64,000 nt of DNA from Convolutriloba macropyga (lineage: Eukaryota): NCBI RefSeq assembly GCF_964194025.1, contig NC_134473.1, forward strand, positions 65,782,001 to 65,846,000, given 5' to 3'. Of this stretch, positions 30,821-45,649 are shown one piece after another. The notes under the pieces were generated by a model. The model was given only the letters and a program-made list of their open reading frames with translations, did not search any database and was not told the DNA's origin. The position numbers and the translations under genes were made by a program. Within the stretch, counting starts at the first letter, position 1; the number at the start of each line of letters is the position of its first letter.

Positions 30821-30849
30821 ATGAATGAGTAATCCAAACTAATTTGTTA

Positions 30850-32247
30850 TTGAGGGATTATCTTGCTAATCCCTTTCGTGTGAACAGCTTGGGTATCATG
30901 CTGTGCGGTACATTTTTGAAAATCACGTAAGTCGTACATAACTGTGAGTCATCATATCTAATGTAATATTTAAACATTTTATAGCTAATCCCCTTCGTGT
31001 GAACAGCGTGTGTATCATGCTGTGAGGTACGTTTTTGGAAATTTACATTATTAAAGTGTAAAATGGTAGGGGGACAATGACCTTACTGATTTGTTGTTAA
31101 AGCACTATCTTGCTAATCCCCTTCGTGCGAACAGCTTGGGTATCGTGCTGAGAGGTACGTCTTTGGCATTAGTAAAGTGTAATATGGGATGGTTAAATGA
31201 CCTTACAATTTTGTTATTGAGGTACTATCTTTCTAATCCCTTTCGTGTGAACAGCTTGGGTATCATGCTGTGAGGTACATTTTTGAAAATCACGTAAGCT
31301 GTACATAGTGTAAATGAGTCATCTTATCTAATTTAATATTAAAACATTACCTAGCTAATCCCCCTTCGTGTGAACAGCTTGGGTATCATGCTGTGAGGTG
31401 CATTTTTGAAAATCACGTATAACGTACGTAACTGTAGATGAGTCATCCTACCTAATTTAATATTAAAACATTACCTAGCTAATCCCCTTTCGTGTGAACA
31501 GCTTGTGTGTCATGCTGTGAGGTACATCTTTAGAAATTGACATTAGTAATTTGTAATATGGTAGGGGGTCAATGTCCTTACTAATTTGTTGTTAAGGCAC
31601 TGTCTTGCTAATCCCCTTCGTGTGAACAGCTTGGGTATCATGCTGTGAGGTACACTTTTGAAAATCACTTAAACCGTACGTAAGTGTAAATGAGTCACCC
31701 TATCTAATTTAATATTAAGACATTACCTAACTAATCCCCTTTGAGAGAACAGCTTGGGTATCATGCTGTGAGGTACGTCTTTGGAAATTTACATTATTAA
31801 AGCGCAATATGGGAATGAGTAAGCCTTACTAATTTAATATTAAGGGATTAACTTGCTAATCCCCCTCGTGTGAACAGCGTGGGTATCAAGCTGTGAGGTA
31901 CACTTTTGAAAATCACTTAAACCGTACGTAAGTGTAAATGAGTCACCCTATCTAATTTAATATTAAAACATTACCTAACTAATTCCCTTTGAGAGAACAG
32001 CTTGGGTATCATGCTGTGAGGTACGTCTTTGGAAATTTACATTATTAAAGTGCAAAATGGGAATGAGTAAGCCTTACTAATTTAATATTAAGGGATTAAC
32101 TTGCTAATCCCCCTCGTGTGAACAGCGTGGGTATCAAGCTGTGAGGTACGTCTTTGGAATTTGAGCGAAAATGGGCTATACCTAATCTTAATACATAGGT
32201 ACTTCCTTTTACCCCCCCCCCCCCTGATCTGCTTAACTATTACTACT
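30850..32247 (-). repeat. Right TIR with 11 copies of the same core
   Basis: Reverse-complement core gctaatcccc...gtgaacagcttgggtatcatgctgtgaggtac repeated from ~30865 to ~32149. The terminal ~350 bp is nearly identical to the left end. Confidence 0.93.
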
Positions 32248-32469: not shown

Positions 32470-34555
32470 TTTATCACAAAGCTATAGGATGTCTGCATAC
32501 ATCTTTGCAATGGGGAGTCTTTGCATTGGAGTGTTATTGGGGTGTATTGTTTGGACAACTTATCATTGTGCCTCTTTTTCACGTGGTTGTCTTCGTATTG
32601 CTAGTGTTCTGTGTGTTGCCTTCACGGTTCTGACAGTGATGATTTCTGTATCAGCTCCCACAGTGAATCTACGGTTCTTTTTCACGAGCTGCGCAGACTT
32701 CCTTGGAATTTATACCCCCCCCCCCTCCCCCCCGCGTTTGACGACTACTGGGATCTTTTGTGCTGCGTCTCTTCCCATCTGCTTATTGACAGCCCTCTAC
32801 GTCGTCTGCTCTTTCGTTCTTGAAGTGTTTGTTCCTGAAGTCTACTCTCGTAGCACTATTATTGCCGTCACTGCCTACAGCGGTGTCAATTAGTTTTGCT
32901 GTGGTGCTGTCTTTCTCTTTGACAGAGATCCGGTTAGAACCCTTCTTGTCCACATTTCAATTTCTTCTTTCGTGACCAGCTGCTCTGATTGCTTCCCCAA
33001 ACGGTCTGCATTGAAGTCTGACTTTACCGTGTCGTCGGATTCGTGCCCCCACCTAATGTGCGGACATGCTTGGTTTATGTGCGCGAGACTCATAGGTTGT
33101 GCATCCTGCATTGCACCATTAGTTGAGCGCTGCTGCGTCATCTTCGAGTTCTTGCGGATCTTCTGTGCTCTGATGTAGTTTTATCCAGAGCGTAGGCCGG
33201 GCCCTTGTTATAAACTAGCCTGCTGTGCTCACACTGTCTCTACTCTGTTTCATGTACCACAGTTTCGTCTCGTCTTATTCTGACAGTTTGTTGGTGTTGT
33301 CAGTATGTATCTCGCGTTTTGTGTTCGTTGTCTGAGTCAGGAGATCGGTGTTGCCATACTTCTCGCATCCATTTCTCCATCTTTGGTAGGAGCGTGGACG
33401 TTTTTCTGAGGAGTTTTTTCCAGATTTCGTATCGAATACATCGTTACATTGATAAATCAGCTTCTTCTGTCTATGGACAAACCAGCTGACTAGCCTTGAC
33501 TTACTTTTCCTAGCTTAAGGAGGGTTTCAACTTCACTGTCTGGCCCAGTTGCTTTGTCTGTCGAATGATTCCGTTGTCTTCTTACCTGGGTTTCTAGCAT
33601 TTCCTCATCGAAGGGCTCAGTCCCTGTCAGTTGCACTTTGATTACATGACTGGTGGTACAGATTTCTACCATGATTGCTTGCCAGTACTAACTTCTTTCG
33701 CTGTGGCCAAATGGGGGCTGGAGGAAGGTTTCTCAATTTCTCCGGAGCTGATGTGTTTGAGGAGTCTTTTTCCTTCTTTCAGAGATTGTAGCAGAAGGCG
33801 TAAAAGTAGCGTCGTATTTCTACTCGAAGGCCTCTTTATGGGCGTTTGTTCTTTCTTTCTACTCACAAGCTGGAAATTTTTACTCTTATTTGGAAATGGC
33901 CGTGATGAACTTGTGTAATTTTGTTGTCTCATCGTGGACCTCTCTAAGATTCAGGTGGATGCCATAGATTAACTCAAACCAAGTGTGACTGGTTTCGCTT
34001 GTGATTTCAACGTCCTCGATCCTTGGTTCTATTCTATCGAAATCAATGAGATCTCTCTGAACTGCCGCTGTGCTCTGTTCTTTTCCTTTGTCCCTTCTTT
34101 GACAGCACTTCTATTTATAGCCCAGTGAACGCTCCCGTCATTTTGTCAATCACATTCCTTCCCGTGTTTATGAGTCGTGCTTCTCTTGTCATTAGTTCGA
34201 TTTCATCAGCTGTCCTTATGGCGTTCACAGGCGTTTTCGGATCAGAGTGCATCTGGAAGCTGGAGACCACTATATTTGCTAACTGAAACAACAACTGCAT
34301 GTGAACGTGGCCCCCTTTGATGATGTTGATTTTCTGGCTTTTCGTTCACCTCGGACTTTGTTAATGTTTCCGCACTCAATCTTTTTGCTAGACTTCGGGG
34401 TGCTTCTGATGTCTGATCTACTTCGCTCGACGCCTCTGCTTGACCTTTGCGTGCTTATGACTACTTTCAACATGCTCTTACGTGTCTCCTCAGTGCTACC
34501 TTGTTGCCACAATTTGAGAGAATTGGACAAGTGAGCAGTTGGCTACTGTAATATT
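32470..34555 (-). mobile_element. Highly decayed, internally deleted R2-like (RLE) retrotransposon, copy c
   Basis: Minus-strand CCHC remnant CNAGCTTYESLAHINQACPH...RIRRH (~33030-33120) and RLE-like PDL...LIDTAVGSD (~32860-32935). Ends approximate. Confidence 0.6.
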
Positions 34556-34580
34556 CAACACAGTCAACTATGACCCAGAA

Positions 34581-34667
34581 GGGAGTTATGACTCTCAAGG
34601 AAAGATGACTCTAAGAGAGTCATAGTGATTCCCTCCTGTGTGCTCCGAGAGTTATAGTAACTCCCGC
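34581..34667 (-). other. Paralogous cassette of 28S R2-target-like sequences upstream of R2 copy c
   Basis: gggagttatgactctcaagg / taagagagtcatagtgattccc / gagagttatagtaactcccgc. Confidence 0.8.
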
Positions 34668-35349
34668 GGAACTCCCGTGTTATGATTGCCTAGAGTAAGC
34701 TAAGGTTTTACGAGTATTCGTTTGAATGTTTCCATCCGATACTTACGAGAGCGGCTTCTTATATCAAAATTTTGATTTTCCAGCGCTTGTTCATCTGGCT
34801 TTCACTGTCGTTTTCTGTTCAGAGAAGAATTGGTCTTCATGTCATCTCCTTTTGGAAGTTGGAGACCCCTATACGTGCTGTAACTGACGCCTCCAACTGC
34901 ATGTGAACACGACCTTCTTTGCTGAGGTCGATATCTCCTGGGCTCTTCGCTCACTTCGGACTTTGTTGATGTCTCCGCGCGCAACCCTAATGCTAGACTA
35001 TTGGGCTCACGTGTCTTCTTTCCGCAGGCTCTCACATTGGCTCGTCAGTGATCCTTGTTGCCAGCTGGCTACTTGAAGATCCAATGTTCTCATGCCGGGA
35101 GCTGTTTCCTTGCTAGCCATATTTTCTTTGCTTTGATTGTCATGTGAGTTTGGTAACCGATCACTGCTGATCACATCGCATATGCAGAAGATTGCGACCT
35201 CTACACTCTTTCAGTGCGATCTAGAGGAAGGTGGTGTCTCTGGTCTCATGCTCCATGCAGTTTTGAGGTTCTGCGTCATGATTGGCTGGAGTCAAATAAC
35301 GATATACGTGTTCTCGTTCGCATCGTACTTTTTTTTGCAAACACTAAAT

Positions 35350-38345
35350 CAACTCTTAAAGTAAATCTAGAAATCTAATTCATTGTAAATATGCGACATA
35401 AATCATTTGAGTTTGGATTTGCATTCAAGTGTATGCTAGCCATGAGCTTTAGCACTGTCTATGTGCGGTCGGGCGACTAGATCCTTTCGGTTCTGAAGTC
35501 GTCGTCATCGCTGAGCTGTGAGCACTCTGTGAACCCGCTTCTCCCACTGCTGGAATGTCCTGGTTGATCTCTTAAGACACCTCACAATGTGTCCGGCTTG
35601 TCAATTATTGCATTACTTCTGAGACATGGTAGTATTTGGGCCTTGGCTTGTAAGGGGTCGTTCAAGGTTGTTGTCACTGCATATGATGCAGTCTATCATC
35701 CATGCCTCTTCATCTGTCCACGGCATGTTGAGACCGACTTCCTGGTGCCTGTCTTGTTTGGACAGCCGGCGCTGATAGGGTGCCTTGGCCCCGCTTCTCC
35801 AAGATCACCTTTGCAAGGTCACACAATAGTTGTGTCTTCTGATCCTATCGCCCCAGCTTCTAGGACACACTTAGAGAATGTGTCCCAGCGTCTCCTTTCT
35901 ACCACAAGCATCCCATAAAGATTCTTTTCCGCTGTACCACCTCTGCATCTTGGCCTTTGTTGTTTTCAGGTTGCCTCTGATTTCTATGATGATTCTTGAT
36001 TTTGTTGAAGGCGGACCCTGTCATGAGCAGTGTCGCGTTGGTCAAGACTGCATTACCCCCACACTTTCGCACTGTGTTGAGACCAGCTCCATCAACTGTT
36101 GATTGCAAGGTGCCCCTGTTCTAACTCAGTTCTTTGATGCTGTGTGGAGTTACAATGTCCATGGTAGGCCTTGCTTCTTCCATGCCTTGAGGCTCTTGAT
36201 GAACCCTGTCTGATTGAGGGTAATGACTGCTGAGTCTTCGTCTCTCATAAATCTGGTGAGCCTTGCCTCCTGCATCAGTGGAACCCTCCTCTGCAACTCA
36301 GGTTTGTCCAGTCCTGCTTCGTCAAAATCAGCCTGAAACATCACCTTGGGCGTGCCTTTTGGTCACCTTATAAATTGTCTCAGTCTTCCTGATGACTCAC
36401 CGGCAAGGTGAGTCATCAGTCTCATGATGTCTAAACCGGCAAGTTTCTGCTTGATTGTTGTCTTCGTGAGGACTATCTGATAGCTAGCACTTGGGGATGC
36501 AGTACGTCTACAGGATTCAGGTCCGCTGATGTGTCTTTAGAGGAGCTCTCCTATAATTGTCCAGCTTTTCTCCAGCTTTTTATGCAGTTTGTCGTTGTTA
36601 CCCTTGGCCCTGTCTCGAAGCCCAAGTACTTATATAAGGACTCTGCTGTCAACGTGGGGAGGCCTCCTGCCCTGCTGCTGAACAGTGCTCTGAATTGTCA
36701 CTCTCTGTCTGTCCTTTGGCACTGTGCCCACAGTGTTGCACACTTCTTAGCATTGAGAGCGCGGCAACATTTTTCGAGCAGCTTCCAGTCTGTTGAATGA
36801 ATCCTGGAGCCCTGTCTGTTCCTTCGCTAGCTGGATGTTGTCGGCGTAGGCGAGGTAATTCAGGTTCTGTGGCCAATTCGATTCCAGTCGTCTGGGGTAA
36901 TGTCTTCAACACACTTTCAATCGCCAGGTTGAACAGGATATTAGCGATGGATCACCAGTCTGGGTCCCTTGGATTCGTGTTTCCCAGTTAATCTCCGATA
37001 TTTTGCCGTGTCTCATATAGCCCCTCTTAATATATCTGAGGATCTTTTGGTCCCTATGGGCTGCTTGTGCTAGGGTCCTGTGGGTCACACTACCAAAGGC
37101 CTCAGGTCTTCGAATGCCAGTTTGCGGCCCTATCTTTGTTTTTTGCCTCACTGATGATGTCCTGTGGCAGTAGAGAATTTATTGCTGTCCCGTTTACCCT
37201 CTTAAAATTCTTGTGTCTGATGTTGTCTTCTAGGTCTTCAAGTCCTGCGCAGCCAAACACTTGTGAAACACGCTGGTCGCTACACTCGCAGCCAGGAGCC
37301 ACTCGGTTAGATGTTCGTCTAATAGCCAAAGATTGAAATGGGAGACCGGCTTCGTCAAAGGGATGCCTGCAGTTGTCCTCCTGATCACCCTGTCTGGTCC
37401 ACTGGCTGTCTGTCCCATGGTCTGCACACTTCTGATCAGTTCTTCGATGGTGATTGGAGTGATCCACCCCTGGCATCTAATGGTGACCAATCGATCATGT
37501 CTATCTCGAGGAGCTGTTGCCATGCATCAAGCAACCCCGTCTTGTTGATGGTGTTAATCTCTCCAAACTTCTCCCAAGACCATGCTAAGACAGAAGCTGC
37601 TGTTTTTCCCTATTTCGTCTGTAGAGCTGCAGTGTTGAATACCGCTGTTGTCTCAGACCCCTCTTTGATCGTCAAGGTTGCTTACGAGCTGTCTGTCCGG
37701 CACCCGTCTTCCCTGGTTCTGGAGCGAGGGTTTTAAGCCACATCTGTCCGTCACTCTCAACATATTGCGTGAGTTCGTCGTTTGTCATATTGCAATGAAA
37801 GTCCAGTCTGTCCTCCGAAGTGTCCTGCACCGCAAATTGAGCGAAACCAGTTGGGTACTTTTGCTTGGCCACTAACGGGTTTCTGACGGGGATCCCTGCC
37901 CTCATGCGCAACCTTTGATGAGCCAGGCTGCGATGTCTGTCTTGTGGCTTTTTGACTTTTTCTGCTTCAAACCAAGCTCACTCCCGACCCGACACTGTCT
38001 TGTTGAGAACATCGTCGTCTCCAGTTGAGGCCAGACTTTTCTTCTGATTTAGGGTTGTGTTTGTTTGGAGTACTGTACCGGAGTACAGACTTTTTTTACC
38101 CAGCTTTTGGCAATTTTTTAAGGTGGTCAGCGCACACCAGACTGCCTTTGATTTGATATGGCTCCAAAACCCTGTTTTTTGGTGGTTTGCTTTCCGCGAA
38201 AGTTTGTTTCATTGTTTTCCTGGTCCGCGGTTTGGTGAGTGGTTTTGTAACCACTGGGCAAGTTTCTAAGTTTTGTCCATTCCGGATATTATTGATGGTG
38301 TGCTTGGATCAGCTGCTGGTGGCGGTTTCCAGTCGGACCCCGAGG
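35350..38345 (-). mobile_element. Decayed R2-like (RLE) retrotransposon, copy b
   Basis: TASGPD, ILFNLAIE, LNYLAYADNI, DEAGLDKPELQ, STVDGAGL, DACGRKETLGHIL...IRRH. Collinear with copy a. Confidence 0.85.
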
Positions 38346-38373
38346 ATATTATACAGTCAATTTTGACCCAGAA

Positions 38374-38460
38374 GAGAGTTATGACTGTCAGGGAAAGATG
38401 ACTCTAGGAGAGTCATAGTAACTGCCGTCTGTCTGCTCCGAGAGTCATAGTTACTCCCGC
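38374..38460 (-). other. Cassette of three short 28S R2-target-like sequences upstream of R2 copy b
   Basis: 38440-38460 is the exact reverse complement of GCGGGAGTAACTATGACTCTC. A second degenerate copy at ~38405-38428 and an inverted copy at ~38374-38392. Confidence 0.85.
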
Positions 38461-39079
38461 TGAGCTTCTGAATGGGGATTGGCTAGAGTCAGGTAAGGCA
38501 TTACGAGGTCTCATTCACATTGTTCCATCGCATGTTAAGATGGAGAACACTGCATAAGCTATAACTGACACCACAAATGCATTTGAACGAGGAATCCGTT
38601 GCCGCGGTTGGAATCTCTTGGATTCTTCCTTCGCCTCTGACTTTCTTGATGTCTCTGCGCTCAATCCTGCTGATGGTCTTTGGGGTGCTTTTGTCTTATT
38701 TCCACAGGCTCTCACTTGGTTTCTCAGTGCTGCCCTTCGTCAGTGCTGCCACTTTACTCGAGCTGTGTGGATAAGTCAGCACCTGGCTCCTGAAAGATCC
38801 AATGTTTTCAGACCGCGAAGTTGTTTCCCATCTAGCCATCCTTTATTGCTTTGCTTGTCAACTGAGTTTGCTTATTGATCTTGTCGATTGAGGATCAGAT
38901 CGCATCTCTCGGACGATTACGACTTCTAGTCCTTTTCAGCATGATCTAGATAAAGGCGGTGTGCCTATTTTCGTGCTCCTTGCAGTTTGAGCTTCTGGGT
39001 CATGGTTGGCTAGAGTCGGGTAACGATTTACGAGTACCCATTCACATACTCCATTTTTTTGCAAACACTGTATTCACGC

Positions 39080-42000
39080 TCTATATAAAGCTAGACATCA
39101 ATACATAATAAAGTATATCTAAGATATGACCTCATACGGAGAGTCCTTAGTGAGTGGGTTGGCATACGAGGGCATGCGAGCCGTGAGTTTGTGAGCACTG
39201 TCATTGTGTGGTCGGGTGACTAGATCCTTGCGGTTCTCTAGTCATCGGTGAGTTGTGACCACTTCCTGAAAACGCTTCTCTTCCACTGCTGGAATGTCCT
39301 GGCTGATACCGCAAGACATCTCACGATGAGCAGTTGGAGGTGACTCTTCTTCAGGCGCAGGTTCCAGAGTATTGTCACGTCTTAGGTGCCATTGCCCCAC
39401 GCCAGCTCATGATCAGGGCGCCAAATGTCACACTTCTAGCCTTTGTCATGCACATCACGTCTTGCACAACTTCTGGGACATGGCAGTAGTTAGCCTTTGC
39501 TTGGTACTGATCATGTTGTCACTGCAGATGATGCTGTCTATCACCCAGGCCTGTTTGTCTTTCCACACCACTAGGTCCGGCTTCCCGATGCCCTGCCTTG
39601 TCTTGATCACTGGTTCGGCAAGTGAGCTGTAGCCCTGCTTCTCCTGTAGTCCCTTAGCTAGGTCCACGCACATGTCGTGTCTCCTGATGCTCTCGCCCCA
39701 GCTTCTGGGACACACTTGGAGGATGTGGGCCAGCGTCTCACGTCTGCCGCAAGCATCACAAGAGGGGTCCTGTCCTCTCTGCCACCATCTTCGCCTTGGT
39801 TCTCTCTCCTCTCTCTCCTAGGCGTTCGCCGTTCATTCGGCATGCCCTCCAGTCGCGCTCGAACATTTCCTCACATGACGGGCAAAGTTTGATGCTGACT
39901 TGTACTCGTTACAGTATTCGCACCATTTCGGTGGCTTGATAACTGTTTTGGTTGTTCTGGGAGTCCTTGGGTTGCATTTTTTAATGTGATTCTGGTAGTT
40001 GCTGAGCATCTTGAAAATTGAGTCACATTTTCCGCAATAGAACACCGTCTTCGTCTGCTCGTGGATCCTCTTTACGTGGCATTTTAGCCCTGCTGCAGTC
40101 TTGCATACTAGTCCACATTCGTCGCATTCTAGGCTTGGGGTTGGTGGTTTTTCATTCCTTTCCCTCTTTTCCGCGAATCTGAACTTGTTTGCTGTTTTGC
40201 TTTCCCAGTCCTCCAAGTGCTGCATTCGTTTCCTGACCATAGCTTTCCATTGTTTCCTGTCCTGTGCCCACTTGTGTGCTTGTCTCCAGTCAATGCCAGC
40301 TTCTGTTAACAGTTTCCTCCAGTAAAAAAGCGTCTTCCTTTTCCTGGGGTTTTAGGAAGTCCTTCGAGGCTTCCCAGCCATCCCATGACAAATTTTCACA
40401 GGACGTTCGTCTGACATTCGGAGGATATGACCAATTCTCTCAAGAGTCCTTTTCTCGATCTTCCATCTTAAACTCTTGACCCCGAGAATATTCCTCACGT
40501 CTTGCATGTTCTTTCCTTCTGCTTCCATTTGTATGAGCGGTGGTGCCTTGTTGTTGCTCCACACTGAGCGGTAACATTTGTCGATCCAACTCTGTAACAT
40601 TTTGATCTCTCCAATGTACTAGGGTCTTGCTGCACAATCGAAGAGTAGGCCACTCTCAACGCAAGTTTCCACAATCTGTGCCTGCTTGGTTTTTGGAAGC
40701 TTGGACTTCTTTAGTTGGTTCCGACACCGCGCCCGCAGTGTTCCAGCACGTTTTTTGCGGCACTTTATATCTTCTTTTGGTCCGAGCCAGCGACCCAGCA
40801 TTCTGATTCCATTTGCCTCTTCGCTGGAAAAGACCACCCGCTCCTCCTTGTCTTCGTTGTTTCGCTCTTCAAACTTGTTCATGACGTCCTTCACTATGTT
40901 CAGACCATCTTCGAGTTCCCTTTTCTGTCCAATGATGGTTGTGTCGTCCGCGAACAAGGAAGAGCAGACATTTCTTGTTTCCGTTTCACTGTTGGCTTTT
41001 TCCACTCTGTCCGGGTGAGGGATTGATGGCGATGGTATCCACTTCCACTCCACACCTGTCGTTTCGTACTCTTCATCACTGTGTTCTTTTCTCTATCTCT
41101 GCGATCCGCATGACTACCTGATGGAATATATTGAAGAGGCAAGGAGAGGTAGAGCAGCCTTCTCGAAGCCCTCTCTCTGGTGTCCATTCGTCGCTTTCGC
41201 CCTCCATTCCCTTGACACGGTATTTCGTAGCCTCATGCAAATCCATCAAGGAGTTCAAGAAACTCCCATCCATTCCGTATCTTCGCAACATTTCCCACAA
41301 GGCCGGTTTATTCACTCTCGGGTAGGCCTTTCTTAGGTCGAGAAGCGTAGCAGTGGGGTCGGTGCTCTCTTCTATTGGCAGGTTCTGTTGCTCTCGTCTC
41401 TTCCGTAGGTCATCTGCGTCTTCCTTCATACGAATGATCACTTGGGTGGCGTCTGTTGTTGATCTGCCCGGCCGGAAACCGCTCTGATTTTCGTCTAACA
41501 GCCCTAATTTTTCAGACCACTGCCTGAGTCGTTTGGACAAAACTTTAGCCAAGATTCTGCTGCCCATGGCAAGAAGACAGACACCTCTGTAGTTGTTAGT
41601 GTCGTTTCTGTCCCCCTTCTTGTGTAGTGGAACTATTTGGCCCACTTTCAATGCTTCATTCCAGGTGGGGGCTCTCTTCTCAAAGCTTTCTGTAACGATT
41701 CTCACTACGTGGTTCTTGGTGGATTGTGAGCTCAGTTTGATATACTTTATTCTGACATTGTCCGCGCCCGGGGCTGAATCCTTCATATCTTTCATGCATT
41801 CTTCAATTTCGTGGGGAGAGGGAGTCTCGTTCAGCTTCTTGTCAGCTTCAACATGCCGTGGATCGTTCCGCCAGTCTCCCATTTTCCTCACCCAGGTCAT
41901 CAGCTCTTCAGGCATGTTCTCGTATCTCTGACTCGATACTTGTTGGAAGTGCGTCTTGAATTCGTCGGTTGTGATTGTGGTGCCCGAATTGGGTTTCGAA

Positions 42001-45000
42001 TCCCTCCCGCCAAGTTGCCTCAGGAGGCGGAACATGCTGCCCATATCTCCTTTTTCGTTTGCATCTCGACATTCGTTAAGGATATTGTCCCACCACGCTC
42101 GTTCCAAGTCCGTCAAGCAGTTTTTCATGTTTCTTCGCGCCACCTTGAGCTGGTCCTTAGCCCACTTGCTGTTCCTTCCCACTTCAGTGTCTTCATTTCT
42201 GCATCTCACTGCTTCAGCAATCTTTTCATGAAGTGATTCAAGCTCCTCTTCATGACCTCTTGTCCAAGGGTTGGCAACATGACGCTTCTTGATTCCACAT
42301 ATCTCTCTGACTGCTTTTTCCATTATCTCCGAGATATCTTTCCAGCTGCAGTCCTCGCTCAGGGTCGTACTGAGGACCTCGGTTCTTTCCAAGAATTCTA
42401 GTGCCTTCTGTTGGACATTTAGAGCTTCCCAGTTTAAGTTTGGTTTCCTCTGTGTCCTGGCAAGGCGGTTGTTTTTAGATGTTGTTCTGATGGTTAGAGT
42501 TATTGGTTGATGATCGGACAGTGCGTTGTCATCCGTAACTTTCATACTCTTGCAGAGTTTGTGTCTTTCGTCCTTCCTCATTACAAAACCATCTAACTCG
42601 TACCATCTCTTATGGCTTTCGTTGAACCACGTCCCCCTCTTTTTGATGTTAAAAAAGGAGTTAACCCATTGCATCTCATTCGTTTTGAACCAGTCTATGA
42701 GGTCTTCCCCTGCAATTGTCGATGGAGTGGTTAGGCCATACTTTCCATTGGCTGGGCCCCGCTCCTCTCTTCCTATATGTGCGTTGTGGTCTCCGCCAAT
42801 AACCAAGGCTAGTGACATCGGGGTTCTCGCCAGTTCGCTTTCTAGGAAGTGACGGTACTGGTCAATATTTTCCGGACCATTGCTCCATAAGGGTTGATAC
42901 ACAGACACGAAGCGTATTTTCTCTAGGGTTATAGATGTTACTCTGTCTCCAAAGTTCTTCTTCTGTCCAAAGTTCTTCTTGTATCCACTGGTTGATTCGC
43001 CTTGGTTGTCATCAAGTTGCCTCTGATCTTCGTCACTGCGATGAAGGTGGACCCTGTCAGGAGCAGTGTGCCTTTGGTCAAGATCCCATGACCCCCACAT
43101 TGTCGCATTGTCTTGAGTCCAGCCCCATTCACTGTGGTGTAGAGTCGGTCTCCCTGTCTGACTCTGAGCTCTGCTATGATGTGAGGGGTTACACTGTCAA
43201 TGCCTTGCTGCTTCTATGCTCTCCAGCAGTTTCTTGAAGAAACCTGATTGTGTGAGCTACCACTGCTGGGTCATCATCTCTCAAGAGTCTTGTTAACCTA
43301 GCCTCCTGCATCAGAAGAACCCTCTTCTGTAGTTCAGGTATGTCCAGTCCTCCGTCATCAACGTCAGCGTGGAAGATCTCCTTGAATGTGTCCTTGGGCC
43401 ATCTCATGAACTGCCTCACAGTCCCCTGATGACCCTGTCTAAGCCACCCAGTACTTGCTTCGTTGTCTTCGTGAGGACTATCTGGTGGTAGAGACTAGGG
43501 ATGCAGTACGTCTGCAGTATCCCGATTCGTTGCTGTGGCTTCAGGGGGGCTCTCCTCAGATCATCTAGCTTCCTCTCCAGCTTCTTGATGAAGTTTGTCT
43601 TAGTGCCATGTGACCATGTTTGAATGCTCAAGAACTTGTAGAAGGACTCGGCTGTCATCGTAGTGAGACCTCCTGCCCTGCTTCCGAACATTGTGCTAGG
43701 GTTTATCACTATTTGTCGGTCCCTTGGCACTGTGTCTAGAGTTGAACACTTCTTTGCATTGAGAGAGAGAGGCCACATCTTTCTTGCTCTGTCTCCAGTC
43801 TGCTGATTAAGTCCCGGAGCCCTGTCTGTCTTTGCTAATAGCACAACGTCGTCGGCAAAGGCGAGGTGATTCATCTTCTCTGTGCCCATCTGGATTCCAG
43901 TCCTCTGGGGTAGTGTCTTCAGCACCCTCTTCATCGCAAGGTTGAAGAGGATTGGGGAGATGGGATTCCCCTGTCTGACTTGGAGATCAACATTGGAGAT
44001 TGACGGGTCAAGACGTCTGGTGAAGCCCTCCAAAGGGGTCACCCTTTGGAGGGCTTCACCAGACGTCTTGACCCGTCAATCTCCCACGTTGTGCCCTGTC
44101 TCTTGTATTCCTTCATGATGTATCAGGATGTATCACGTATTGGGATGTATCACTATGCTTGCTTCTAGTGCTTCTTCTGCCTGGGCCTTGTGGGTCACAC
44201 TGTCTAAGGCCTTCTTCACATAGGCCAGTTTGAATCCCTGTGTGTGTGTCTTTGCCTCACTAATGATGTCCTGCAACAGAAGAGAGTAGATTGCTGTTCC
44301 GTCTTCCCTCTTGAAGCCCTTCTGTCTGATGTTGTCATCGATGTCCTTAAGTCATGCAGCCAAACACTTGTGGAACACCCAGGACAGTACACTTGCCACT
44401 GTGATGGTCTGAAGTCCATTGGTTCCTGAGACCCTTACACCTTGGGATGAACACTGTCCTTACAGTCAGGAGCCACTCGGGTAGATGTTCAGCCAATAGC
44501 TAGAGATTGAAGTGGGGAACCATCTTCTTGAAGGGGATGCCAGTCATCGTCTTCCTGCTCACCCTGTCAGGTCCAGTGGCTGTCTGTCCCATGGTCCGCA
44601 CACTCTTGATCACTTCGATGGTGATTGGAGTGACCATCACTGACCGCTGATTGTGCTCAGATCGATTGTCTCTGCCACAGTCTCGAGGAGCTGCTGCCAT
44701 GCATCTAGGAACACTGTCCTGTCTGTGATGGGGTTCTCCAATGACCCATCCATGACTGATGGAGCTGCCTTTGCCCTGTCTCGTTTGTAGAGAGCCTGTA
44801 GTCTTGCATACTGAAGTCGTCTTGTGTCCTTCTTGGAACGTCTGGGTTGTTTACGAGCCCCTGGTCCACCACTCTTCTTCTCTGGTTCTTGAGAAAGGGT
44901 TTGTAGCCACATATGTCCCTCCCTCTCGACGTACTGGGTGAGATCGTCATGCATCATATTTTGCCATTCATCTGGACGATGCCAGCATCTCTACATCAAT

Positions 45001-45566
45001 GAATGTCTCAAGACAGTGCCTTGGCCTGTAATTTTGCTCAGTGGTCTCGACCCTGTCTTTTGCCTGCATCAGTGCCACAAACTGCTGATTTTTTTTCCAA
45101 GCCTTTGAACAACTCTGCGGACCGATGGGGAAACAGTCTGGCCAGTTGCTCATTCTGTTGCTTCTGGGATGCAGGATTTAGGCCCATCATCGCTTCTTTG
45201 ACCAGAGCCATCTCCTCGAGTGTCCACCTTGCTTTGAATCTCCTTGTCTTCTGGGCCTGCATCTGATGGTAGTCATCTGGGTGCCTGTTTCTTGTGTGTA
45301 CTGAGAGACCAGTCTGTCCTTTGAAGGGTCCAGCTCCTCAGATTGAGCAGCACCAGTTGGGGGCTATTGCTTGGCCACTTACTGGTTCCTGGAAGGGATC
45401 CCCGCCTGCATGTCTACCCTGTGATGCGATGCGCCCATATGTGATGCCCCTGTCTTGTGACTTCTGGTCTTGTGCTGCTTCAGGCCTAGCTCACTCCTTA
45501 ACGGACCCTGTCAGCAGATGTCACAGGTCCACATCGAGGCCACTTCTCCACAACTAAAGAAGCAGC
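39080..45566 (-). mobile_element. R2-like (RLE) retrotransposon, copy a, 5'-truncated and interrupted by an RTE-like LINE
   Basis: N-terminal C2H2 fingers (WTCDIC...GLKQHKTRSH; GLSVHTRNRHP) and Myb (KARWTLEEMALV). RT motifs VRQGNPISPILFN, HLAFADD, APLKPQQR. CCHC CDACGRRETLAHILQVC...IRRHD and RLE KPDLVVWKDKQAWVID. Confidence 0.92.
39802..42995 (-). mobile_element. 5'-truncated RTE-like APE-RT LINE nested in R2 copy a
   Basis: 12-bp TSD ttcgccttggtt at 39790-39801 and 42996-43007; GA-rich 3' tail. APE motifs GGDHNAHIG and SDHQPI; RT motifs NYRGVCLL, QSGFRPGRST, GLREGCSTSP, LFADDT; C-terminal zinc fingers. Confidence 0.92.
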
Positions 45567-45567
45567 A

Positions 45568-45649
45568 TTATGAGAGTCAGAGTTACTCCCGTCGTTTACC
45601 TGCGTTTATTTTAATATCTTCTCTTTGACTTTCAGAGCGCTGGGTAGAA
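45568..45649 (-). other. Degenerate 28S rDNA fragment ending at the canonical R2 insertion site
   Basis: Minus strand ttctacccagcgctctgaaagtcaaagagaagatattaaaataaacgcaggtaaacgacgggagtaactctgactctcataa versus 28S TTCTGCCCAGTGCTCTGAATGTCAAAGTGAAGAAATTCAATGAAGCGCGGGTAAACGGCGGGAGTAACTATGACTCTCTTAAGG. Confidence 0.9.

What the first reader, a model, noticed from the sequence alone, without database searches (positions are those of the whole stretch)
38374..38460. Compact cassette of direct and inverted 28S target copies, with one 21/21 match amid decayed flanks
Seen: two direct copies and one inverted copy of the sequence upstream of the R2 site, plus a local palindrome (atgactct-agg-agagtcat). 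One copy is still a perfect 21-mer, while the adjacent R2 ORF is full of lesions. A paralog lies at 34581-34667. Known: some R2 HDV-like ribozymes pair upstream 28S sequence with the element 5'UTR and cleave within the 28S part, which creates target duplications at 5' junctions. Inference: a ribozyme remnant, or a structured target decoy under constraint.
Basis: partly seen in the sequence, partly recalled or inferred. Interest (0 to 1): 0.7.

Follow-up and report, generated by a model that had tools for sequence, protein, structure and literature searches.

The report
Fossil 5' junction of dead R2
The cassette is the decayed 5' junction of a dead R2 retrotransposon lying outside the ribosomal DNA; its 28S copies are the scar this element family leaves because its ribozyme cuts 28 bases upstream in the 28S gene, a known feature of R2 and not a new functional element.

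Summary
On the minus strand, 38374-38460 holds a perfect 21-mer of this genome's own 28S (-27..-7 from the R2 site), a second direct copy (-28..-4, 21/25), an inverted copy, and an 8-bp palindrome. The paralog at 34581-34667 has the same layout.

It is the 5' junction of decayed R2 copy 1 (38373->35288). This copy sits in a head-to-tail R2 array on a chromosome-size contig, not in rDNA.

Of 36 active R2 copies surveyed in this genome's rDNA, 22 carry one or more extra 28S leaders at the 5' junction, each starting at GGCGGGAG (-28). That is the pattern published for R2 ribozymes that self-cleave 28 nt upstream (PMC3774820).

The active copies can form a full HDV-like fold (22/22 pairs). The window copy keeps 13/22, and its core lies outside the finding, at 38298-38355. 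"Ribozyme remnant" is therefore partly right: the cassette is only the P1 strand and J1/2 leader.

The decoy-under-constraint reading is not supported. A perfect 21-mer is not improbable. The two cassettes are more alike (87%) than their flanks (63-76%), but one R2 ORF window is equally alike. The hairpin is stable in one paralog only, with no compensatory changes. How the array arose is unresolved. This is a new member of a known kind, of low to moderate interest.

The parts
38440..38460 (-). Leader 1: 28S -27..-7, a perfect 21-mer. No 28S sequence lies upstream of it, so the unit begins at the predicted ribozyme cleavage site.
38430..38439 (-). 10-nt filler (GGAGCAGACA) between the two 28S leaders. 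It is homologous in the paralog.
38405..38429 (-). Leader 2: decayed direct copy of 28S -28..-4, with 4 of 25 bases changed. It would be the P1 5' strand plus the start of J1/2.
38398..38416 (-). Local palindrome ATGACTCT-CCT-AGAGTCAT, an 8-bp stem. The 3' arm is a short inverted 28S piece.
38374..38389 (-). Inverted copy of 28S -25..-7 with a 3-nt gap. It pairs with leader 2 to give a long hairpin in J1/2.
38298..38355 (-). Decayed HDV-like ribozyme core of R2 copy 1. The parts are P2 remnant 38350-38355, P3/L3 38338-38345, P1' 38331-38337, P1.1 38329-38330 and P2' 38298-38303.
35288..38373 (-). R2 copy 1, full length but dead. It is 70-75% identical to the active rDNA R2.
38461..38529 (-). 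Module Mp just upstream of the cassette: the 3' 'tail' of the preceding unit, then TAGCCAA (28S +1..+7), then 18 nt.
38485..39004 (-). Spacer X2, unique to this locus and of unknown origin. It ends in the same 3' tail as the R2 copies.
39012..45556 (-). R2 copy 2, 83-84% identical to the active R2 and lacking the 5' UTR and ribozyme. An unrelated APE+RT LINE is nested at 39804-42996.
45568..45649 (-). Genuine 28S upstream flank (-84..-3) at the head of the array, with 11 of 82 bases changed.
34581..34667 (-). Paralogous cassette A with the same architecture. Its R2 body is deleted about 20 nt downstream, with the break at 34560.

Best explanation
The cassette is the fossil 5' junction of a dead, full-length R2 retrotransposon (copy 1, minus strand). 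This copy lies in a head-to-tail array of R2 copies and spacers on a chromosome-size contig, outside the rDNA.

In this R2 family an HDV-like ribozyme in the 5' UTR pairs its P1' strand (TCTCGCT) with 28S bases -28..-22 (GGCGGGA). It cuts the 28S/R2 co-transcript 28 nt upstream of the insertion site. The RNA therefore carries a 28S leader. When reverse transcription runs to the RNA end and the cDNA is joined out of register, the leader is added next to the target's own 28S. This produces direct 28S duplications, often with filler bases.

The two direct copies here are such leaders. The inverted pieces are best read as a fold-back or template-switch product made once, when the junction formed, because both paralogs share them. 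Both cassettes start at -27 with no 28S upstream. This argues that each unit was copied from a ribozyme-processed RNA.

Shown: the anatomy, the homology to active R2, the junction pattern in active copies, the possible fold, and its decay in the window copy. Inferred: cleavage at -28, the fold-back origin of the inverted pieces, and the RNA-level origin of the units. At this locus the cassette has no present function.
For: - The ORF pieces beside the cassette are R2: Myb, RT (AFADD), CCHC and a PD-(D/E)xK nuclease, all on the minus strand.
- An intact 3.7-kb R2 with a 1063-aa ORF sits at TTAAGG|TAGCC in rDNA contigs.
- I surveyed 36 active 5' junctions, which fall into 26 types. 22 of the 36 carry one or more extra leaders, each starting at GGCGGGAG (-28), often with filler. 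Some stack two or three leaders, and in some the duplication is inherited.
- PMC3774820 describes the same pattern: -28 is the commonest R2 cleavage site, junction duplications have a matching length, and the 5' end can be extended heritably.
- The active copies can form P1, P1.1, P2, P3 and P4 at 22/22 pairs, with P3/L3/P1' reading CCUCCACGAGG-UCUCGCU-GG. In register 84% of cells pair, against 33-41% when the partners are slid.
- The window copy pairs at 13/22.
- A fossil R2 on contig C12 carries a similar decayed 28-nt leader.
- There is no 28S similarity upstream of -27 in either cassette.
Against:
- Rfam finds no HDV-like family even in the active copy, so the fold rests on my own hand-built model, and there is no covariation because only four lineages are available.
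- None of the 36 active junctions contains an inverted 28S piece, and the leader-plus-inverted join occurs nowhere else in the genome.
- The cassettes are more alike (14/108 differences, no gaps) than their flanks. A purely neutral, same-age model does not predict this.
Confidence: 0.85

Rival explanations
1. The cassette is kept by selection at this locus as a structured 28S half-site. It would act as a decoy or landing pad that binds R2 protein, or captures new insertions, away from the rDNA.
For: - Cassette A versus B: 13% differences and no gaps, against 24-37% in the flanks. This ties for top of 32 windows.
- Cassette A folds far better than its shuffles (z -4.6).
- Copy 2's body carries less neutral-looking change (0.05 at codon positions 1 and 2) than its own 28S flank (11/82) or copy 1 (0.13-0.15). 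This could mean a later insertion at the same half-site.
- A-clade R2 N-terminal regions bind only the upstream half-site (PMC11204384).
Against: - One R2 ORF window is equally alike (87%) and a third reaches 85%, so the excess similarity is not unique to the cassette.
- The finding's own copy B folds no better than chance (z -1.2 to -1.9). By my own reading there is no compensatory change.
- The cassette has no TAGCC half, and nothing is inserted at or within it.
- The perfect 21-mer has a 5-24% chance per leader at the observed decay rates.
- No other copy of the cassette exists in the genome.
- No RNA run is on record among the runs that hold the locus.
Confidence: 0.07
2. The cassette together with its downstream sequence is still a working self-cleaving ribozyme.
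For: - P1.1, parts of P2 and P4, and the GCACAC strand survive.
Against: - Only 13 of 22 pairs can form, and P1 keeps 3 of 7, or 5 of 7 if the perfect 21-mer is used instead.
- L3 is altered, P3 keeps only wobble pairs with a central mismatch, and J4/2 has changed from TGAGCTAA to TGATCCAA.
- The R2 ORF beside it is dead.
Confidence: 0.02
3. The two cassettes are merely a piece of a tandem DNA duplication of one old junction, with no RNA step in forming the array. Their extra similarity is a short gene-conversion tract.
For: - The whole unit R2-Md-X-Mp-cassette is repeated, and diagnostic bases are shared between matching modules.
- The junction architecture is found only in these two copies.
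- Tandem repeats commonly exchange short tracts. This last point is general knowledge, not tested here.
Against: - The unit boundary falls at 28S -27, the predicted RNA 5' end. For a random DNA breakpoint this would be an unlikely coincidence.
- Copies 1 and 2 have unequal private branches, 0.24 against 0.08.
Confidence: 0.3

Closest known systems
R2 5' junctions with tandem 28S duplications, produced by upstream (-28) self-cleavage of the HDV-like R2 ribozyme (Eickbush, Burke and Eickbush 2013, PMC3774820)
   Same: - The duplicated 28S starts at -28.
- Filler bases lie between the copies.
- Leaders are stacked.
- The duplicate is carried inside J1/2 as a 5' extension of the element.
- P1 is formed between 28S -28..-22 and a strand directly 3' of P3/L3.
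   Different: - This copy also has inverted 28S pieces that form a long hairpin.
- It lies outside the rDNA, joined head-to-tail to another unit rather than to a 28S gene.
- Its ribozyme has decayed.
Tandem or extra-rDNA R1/R2 copies with short 28S tags (Stage and Eickbush 2009, PMC2718515)
   Same: - Site-specific rDNA elements occur outside the rDNA.
- They occur as tandem arrays separated by short 28S pieces.
- Full-length copies outside the rDNA carry 28S tags at the 5' end that come from the co-transcript.
   Different: - The published arrays are of R1, or of an R1/R2 fusion, in Drosophila.
- Here the array is of R2, with a 0.5-kb unique spacer and a 68-nt repeated module between units.
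End-to-end template jumping by R2 reverse transcriptase (2X products in vitro, PMC11204384)
   Same: - It would give head-to-tail units, each starting at the RNA 5' end.
   Different: - It has not been shown for this locus.
- The units here differ in apparent age.

Membership tests
R2 non-LTR retrotransposon (the element that owns the cassette) | A single ORF with N-terminal zinc finger(s) and Myb, an RT domain, a CCHC motif and a C-terminal restriction-like endonuclease | tested here: met
   - The active copy has two C2H2 fingers, RWTLEEM, AFADD, CDACG...C and KPDLVVW...D.
- Window copies 1 and 2 align to it over aa 2-1062 and 33-1061 respectively, with many breaks.
- RVT_1 matches on Pfam.
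R2 non-LTR retrotransposon (the element that owns the cassette) | Insertion at the 28S site TTAAGG|TAGCC | tested here: met
   - The rDNA copies have 28S up to about -4 upstream and A(n)|TAGCCAAATGCC downstream.
- The window copies are followed by a 41-nt tail and then TAGCCAA only.
HDV-like self-cleaving ribozyme (active family) | A nested double pseudoknot of P1, P1.1, P2, P3 and P4, with P1' directly 3' of P3/L3 | tested here: met
   - 22 of 22 pairs can form in the active copies.
- 84% of cells pair in register, against 33-41% when slid.
- There is no covariation, because only four lineages are available.
HDV-like self-cleaving ribozyme (active family) | Self-cleavage 5' of P1, with a catalytic C in J4/2 | not testable with these tools
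   - A C is present in J4/2 (GAGCUAA).
- The cleavage site is inferred from 22 of 36 junctions whose extra leader starts at G(-28).
HDV-like self-cleaving ribozyme (window copy at 38298-38460) | Intact P1, P2, P3 and P4 helices and an intact J4/2 | tested here: not met
   13 of 22 pairs form, P1 keeps 3 of 7, and J4/2 reads TGATCCAA.
HDV-like ribozyme families in Rfam | A score at or above the family threshold | tested here: not met
   There is no hit in the window and none in the active copy either. The negative result is therefore uninformative.
Element under purifying selection at this locus | Lower divergence than neutral flanks, plus structure kept through compensatory change | tested here: inconclusive
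   - Divergence is lower: 0.13 against 0.24-0.37.
- It ties with an ORF window for the top place.
- The structure is not kept in copy B.
- No orthologous loci are available.

The most novel reading that the evidence does not exclude
The locus could be a chromosomal 28S half-site that captured R2 insertions repeatedly. Copy 2 looks younger than its own 28S flank and than copy 1. On this reading the leader/inverted-repeat cassette is kept because it binds R2 protein or feeds a silencing pathway, making the locus a trap that spares the rDNA.
Probability: 0.07. Interest if true: 0.65.

Novelty: new member of a known kind. Interest (0 to 1): 0.25.

Why it matters
The cassette itself is ordinary R2 biology. 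Its main use is as a clean genomic read-out. In this species the junction duplications place the R2 RNA 5' end at 28S -28, and they show that duplicated leaders can be inherited and stacked, as the published model of R2 5'-end evolution proposes.

Two side points may interest R2 specialists. First, inverted 28S pieces build a long hairpin in J1/2. Second, in this extra-rDNA array the units start at the RNA 5' end and seem to differ in age.

Tried and rejected
- I first read the neighbouring 674-aa ORF (41076-43100) as part of the element. It carries APE and RT domains and is an unrelated LINE nested in R2 copy 2.
- I first read the third 28S-like piece as a direct copy of -19..-1 (12/19). The inverted reading fits better (16/17 with one 3-nt gap).
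- Rfam, at both gathering and E-value thresholds, finds nothing HDV-like, even in the active copy.
- Spacer X has no significant match to the ribozyme, R2 or 28S. Local alignments score no better than shuffles.
- The 18 nt after TAGCCAA could not be shown to be 28S.
- A protein search with the active R2 gave only four unnamed hits at 35-39% identity, so the host clade stays unknown.
- No RNA run is on record among the runs that hold the locus, so expression could not be tested.
- CpG decay does not explain the older look of the 28S flank: only 1 of its 11 changes is at a CpG.

Full report
**What is in the sequence**

Everything relevant reads in sense on the minus strand. Window 38440-38460 is GCGGGAGTAACTATGACTCTC. 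This is identical to the genome's own 28S at -27..-7 from the R2 site TTAAGG|TAGCC. The 21-mer occurs 621 times in the genome, in rDNA contigs, and 0 times in the reversed control.

Downstream of it, in minus sense, come:
- a 10-nt filler;
- a second direct 28S copy at 38405-38429 (-28..-4, 21/25);
- an 8-bp palindrome at 38398-38416;
- an inverted 28S copy at 38374-38389;
- TTCTGG;
- the R2 5' UTR.

The paralog at 34581-34667 has the same layout. The 28S 16-mer, allowing up to 3 mismatches, occurs 5 times in the window against 0.48 expected by chance. Logan contigs from two runs of one study reproduce 38058-38474 without a difference.

**Context**

The window is G000:C6:65.78 Mb, on a chromosome-size contig and not in rDNA. 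From high to low coordinates, the minus strand carries:
- a genuine 28S flank, -84..-3 (45649-45568; 11/82 changed);
- R2 copy 2 (45556-39012), 83-84% identical to the active R2, lacking the 5' UTR, with an unrelated APE+RT LINE nested at 39804-42996;
- a 41-nt tail, then TAGCCAA, then 18 nt;
- spacer X2, unique to this locus;
- the same tail + TAGCCAA + 18 nt module again;
- cassette B, which is the finding;
- R2 copy 1 (38373-35288), 70-75% identical to the active R2, with 37 out-of-frame indels;
- the same modules and spacer X1;
- cassette A;
- about 20 nt of R2 5' end, then a deletion that runs into a third copy of X.

**What the active element shows**

Intact 3.7-kb R2 copies with a 1063-aa ORF sit at the canonical site in rDNA contigs and end in a long A run before TAGCCAAATGCC. 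The ORF has two C2H2 fingers, Myb, RT, CCHC and a PD-(D/E)xK nuclease.

I read 36 of their 5' junctions, which fall into 26 types. 22 of the 36 have one or more extra 28S leaders, and each leader begins at GGCGGGAG (-28). Filler bases are frequent. Some junctions stack two or three leaders on an inherited one.

This matches the pattern published for R2 ribozymes that cleave upstream in 28S. In that work -28 is the commonest site, and duplicated leaders are proposed to become heritable 5' extensions within J1/2 (PMC3774820). A fossil R2 on contig C12 has a similar, decayed 28-nt leader.

**The ribozyme**

Starting at -28, the active copies can form:
- P1: GGCGGGA with TCTCGCT;
- P2: GTGTGC with GCACAC;
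- P3: CCT with AGG, with L3 reading CCACG;
- P1.1: CC with GG;
- P4: GCCA with TGGC;
- J4/2: TGAGCTAA.

P1' follows directly after P3, as in HDV. All 22 pairs can form. Across the four lineages 84% of cells pair in register, against 33-41% when the partners are slid. There is no covariation.

Rfam detects nothing HDV-like even in the active copy, so its silence on the window means little.

In window copy 1 the core lies at 38298-38355. It keeps 13/22 pairs, with P1 at 3/7 and J4/2 altered. The cassette is therefore the leader and J1/2 part of a dead ribozyme-bearing 5' end, not the ribozyme itself.

**Constraint**

*The perfect 21-mer.* The four 28S-derived leaders carry 0, 2, 3 and 4 changes, and none is shared between paralogs. 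At 6-13% decay per lineage a given 21-mer stays intact with a chance of 5-24% (my calculation). One intact leader out of four is therefore unremarkable.

*Similarity of the two cassettes.* Cassette A versus B, including the 20 nt downstream, differs at 14 of 108 sites with no gap. The flanks differ at 24-37% with many gaps. This ties for the best of 32 non-overlapping windows, but one R2 ORF window also reaches 87% and another 85%.

*Structure.* Leader 2 and the inverted copy form a long hairpin. It is very stable in A (z -4.1 to -4.6) but not in B (z -1.2 to -1.9). I saw no compensatory change.

The excess similarity is real but weak evidence. A short conversion tract would explain it, as would closer kinship of the two units that own the cassettes.

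**How the array arose: unresolved**

Both cassettes start at -27 with no 28S upstream. That position is the predicted RNA 5' end. This favours units copied from ribozyme-processed RNA, by serial TPRT or template jumping (PMC11204384), over a random DNA breakpoint.

Against a purely RNA-level origin, the unit R2-Md-X-Mp-cassette is repeated as a whole, and the junction architecture exists only here.

The apparent ages of the parts differ:
- copy 1: 0.13-0.15 private change at codon positions 1 and 2;
- copy 2: 0.05;
- copy 2's own 28S flank: 0.134.

Later insertion at a retained half-site, ectopic conversion, or copying from a dead donor would each fit these figures.

**Verdict**

This is a known kind of R2 junction scar in a fossil extra-rDNA array.

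Noticed in passing
window 39804-42996 (-): A LINE with APE and RT domains is nested in R2 copy 2. It has an open 674-aa frame (41076-43100) and a C2H2 zinc-finger ORF at 39833-40240, and it is younger than its host.
   Followed up: partly
window 38485-39004, 34692-35281, 34155-34558 (-): The 0.5-kb spacer X is unique to this locus. It is bracketed by two copies of a 68-nt module (41-nt tail + TAGCCAA + 18 nt). Its origin is unknown; it may be a non-autonomous R2 derivative.
   Followed up: partly
window 30833-32183: A satellite with a period of about 123 bp, with 10 or more copies, lies just beside the array.
   Followed up: no
L069 (G000:C12:15561000-15570000): This is a second extra-rDNA R2 locus. 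Two copies 92% alike are each preceded by about 240 nt of 28S, and 140 nt of 28S follows. The 59-nt repeat of the 5' UTR is expanded to about 6 copies.
   Followed up: partly
L070 (G000:C4:56736000-56745000): This is a third extra-rDNA R2 locus. It has one 5'-truncated copy plus three tandem 3' fragments, followed by non-28S sequence (AAAAA|ATAGCAAAT...).
   Followed up: no
L072 (C1027), L074 (C3948): These active-type R2 copies have leader duplications preceded by non-28S sequence. They may be template jumps or rDNA rearrangements.
   Followed up: no
window 37933-38055, 38475, 38483, 38598-38681: Contigs of the public runs show a second haplotype in the flanks, including 44 extra letters at 38000. 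No variants appear between 38088 and 38444.
   Followed up: no
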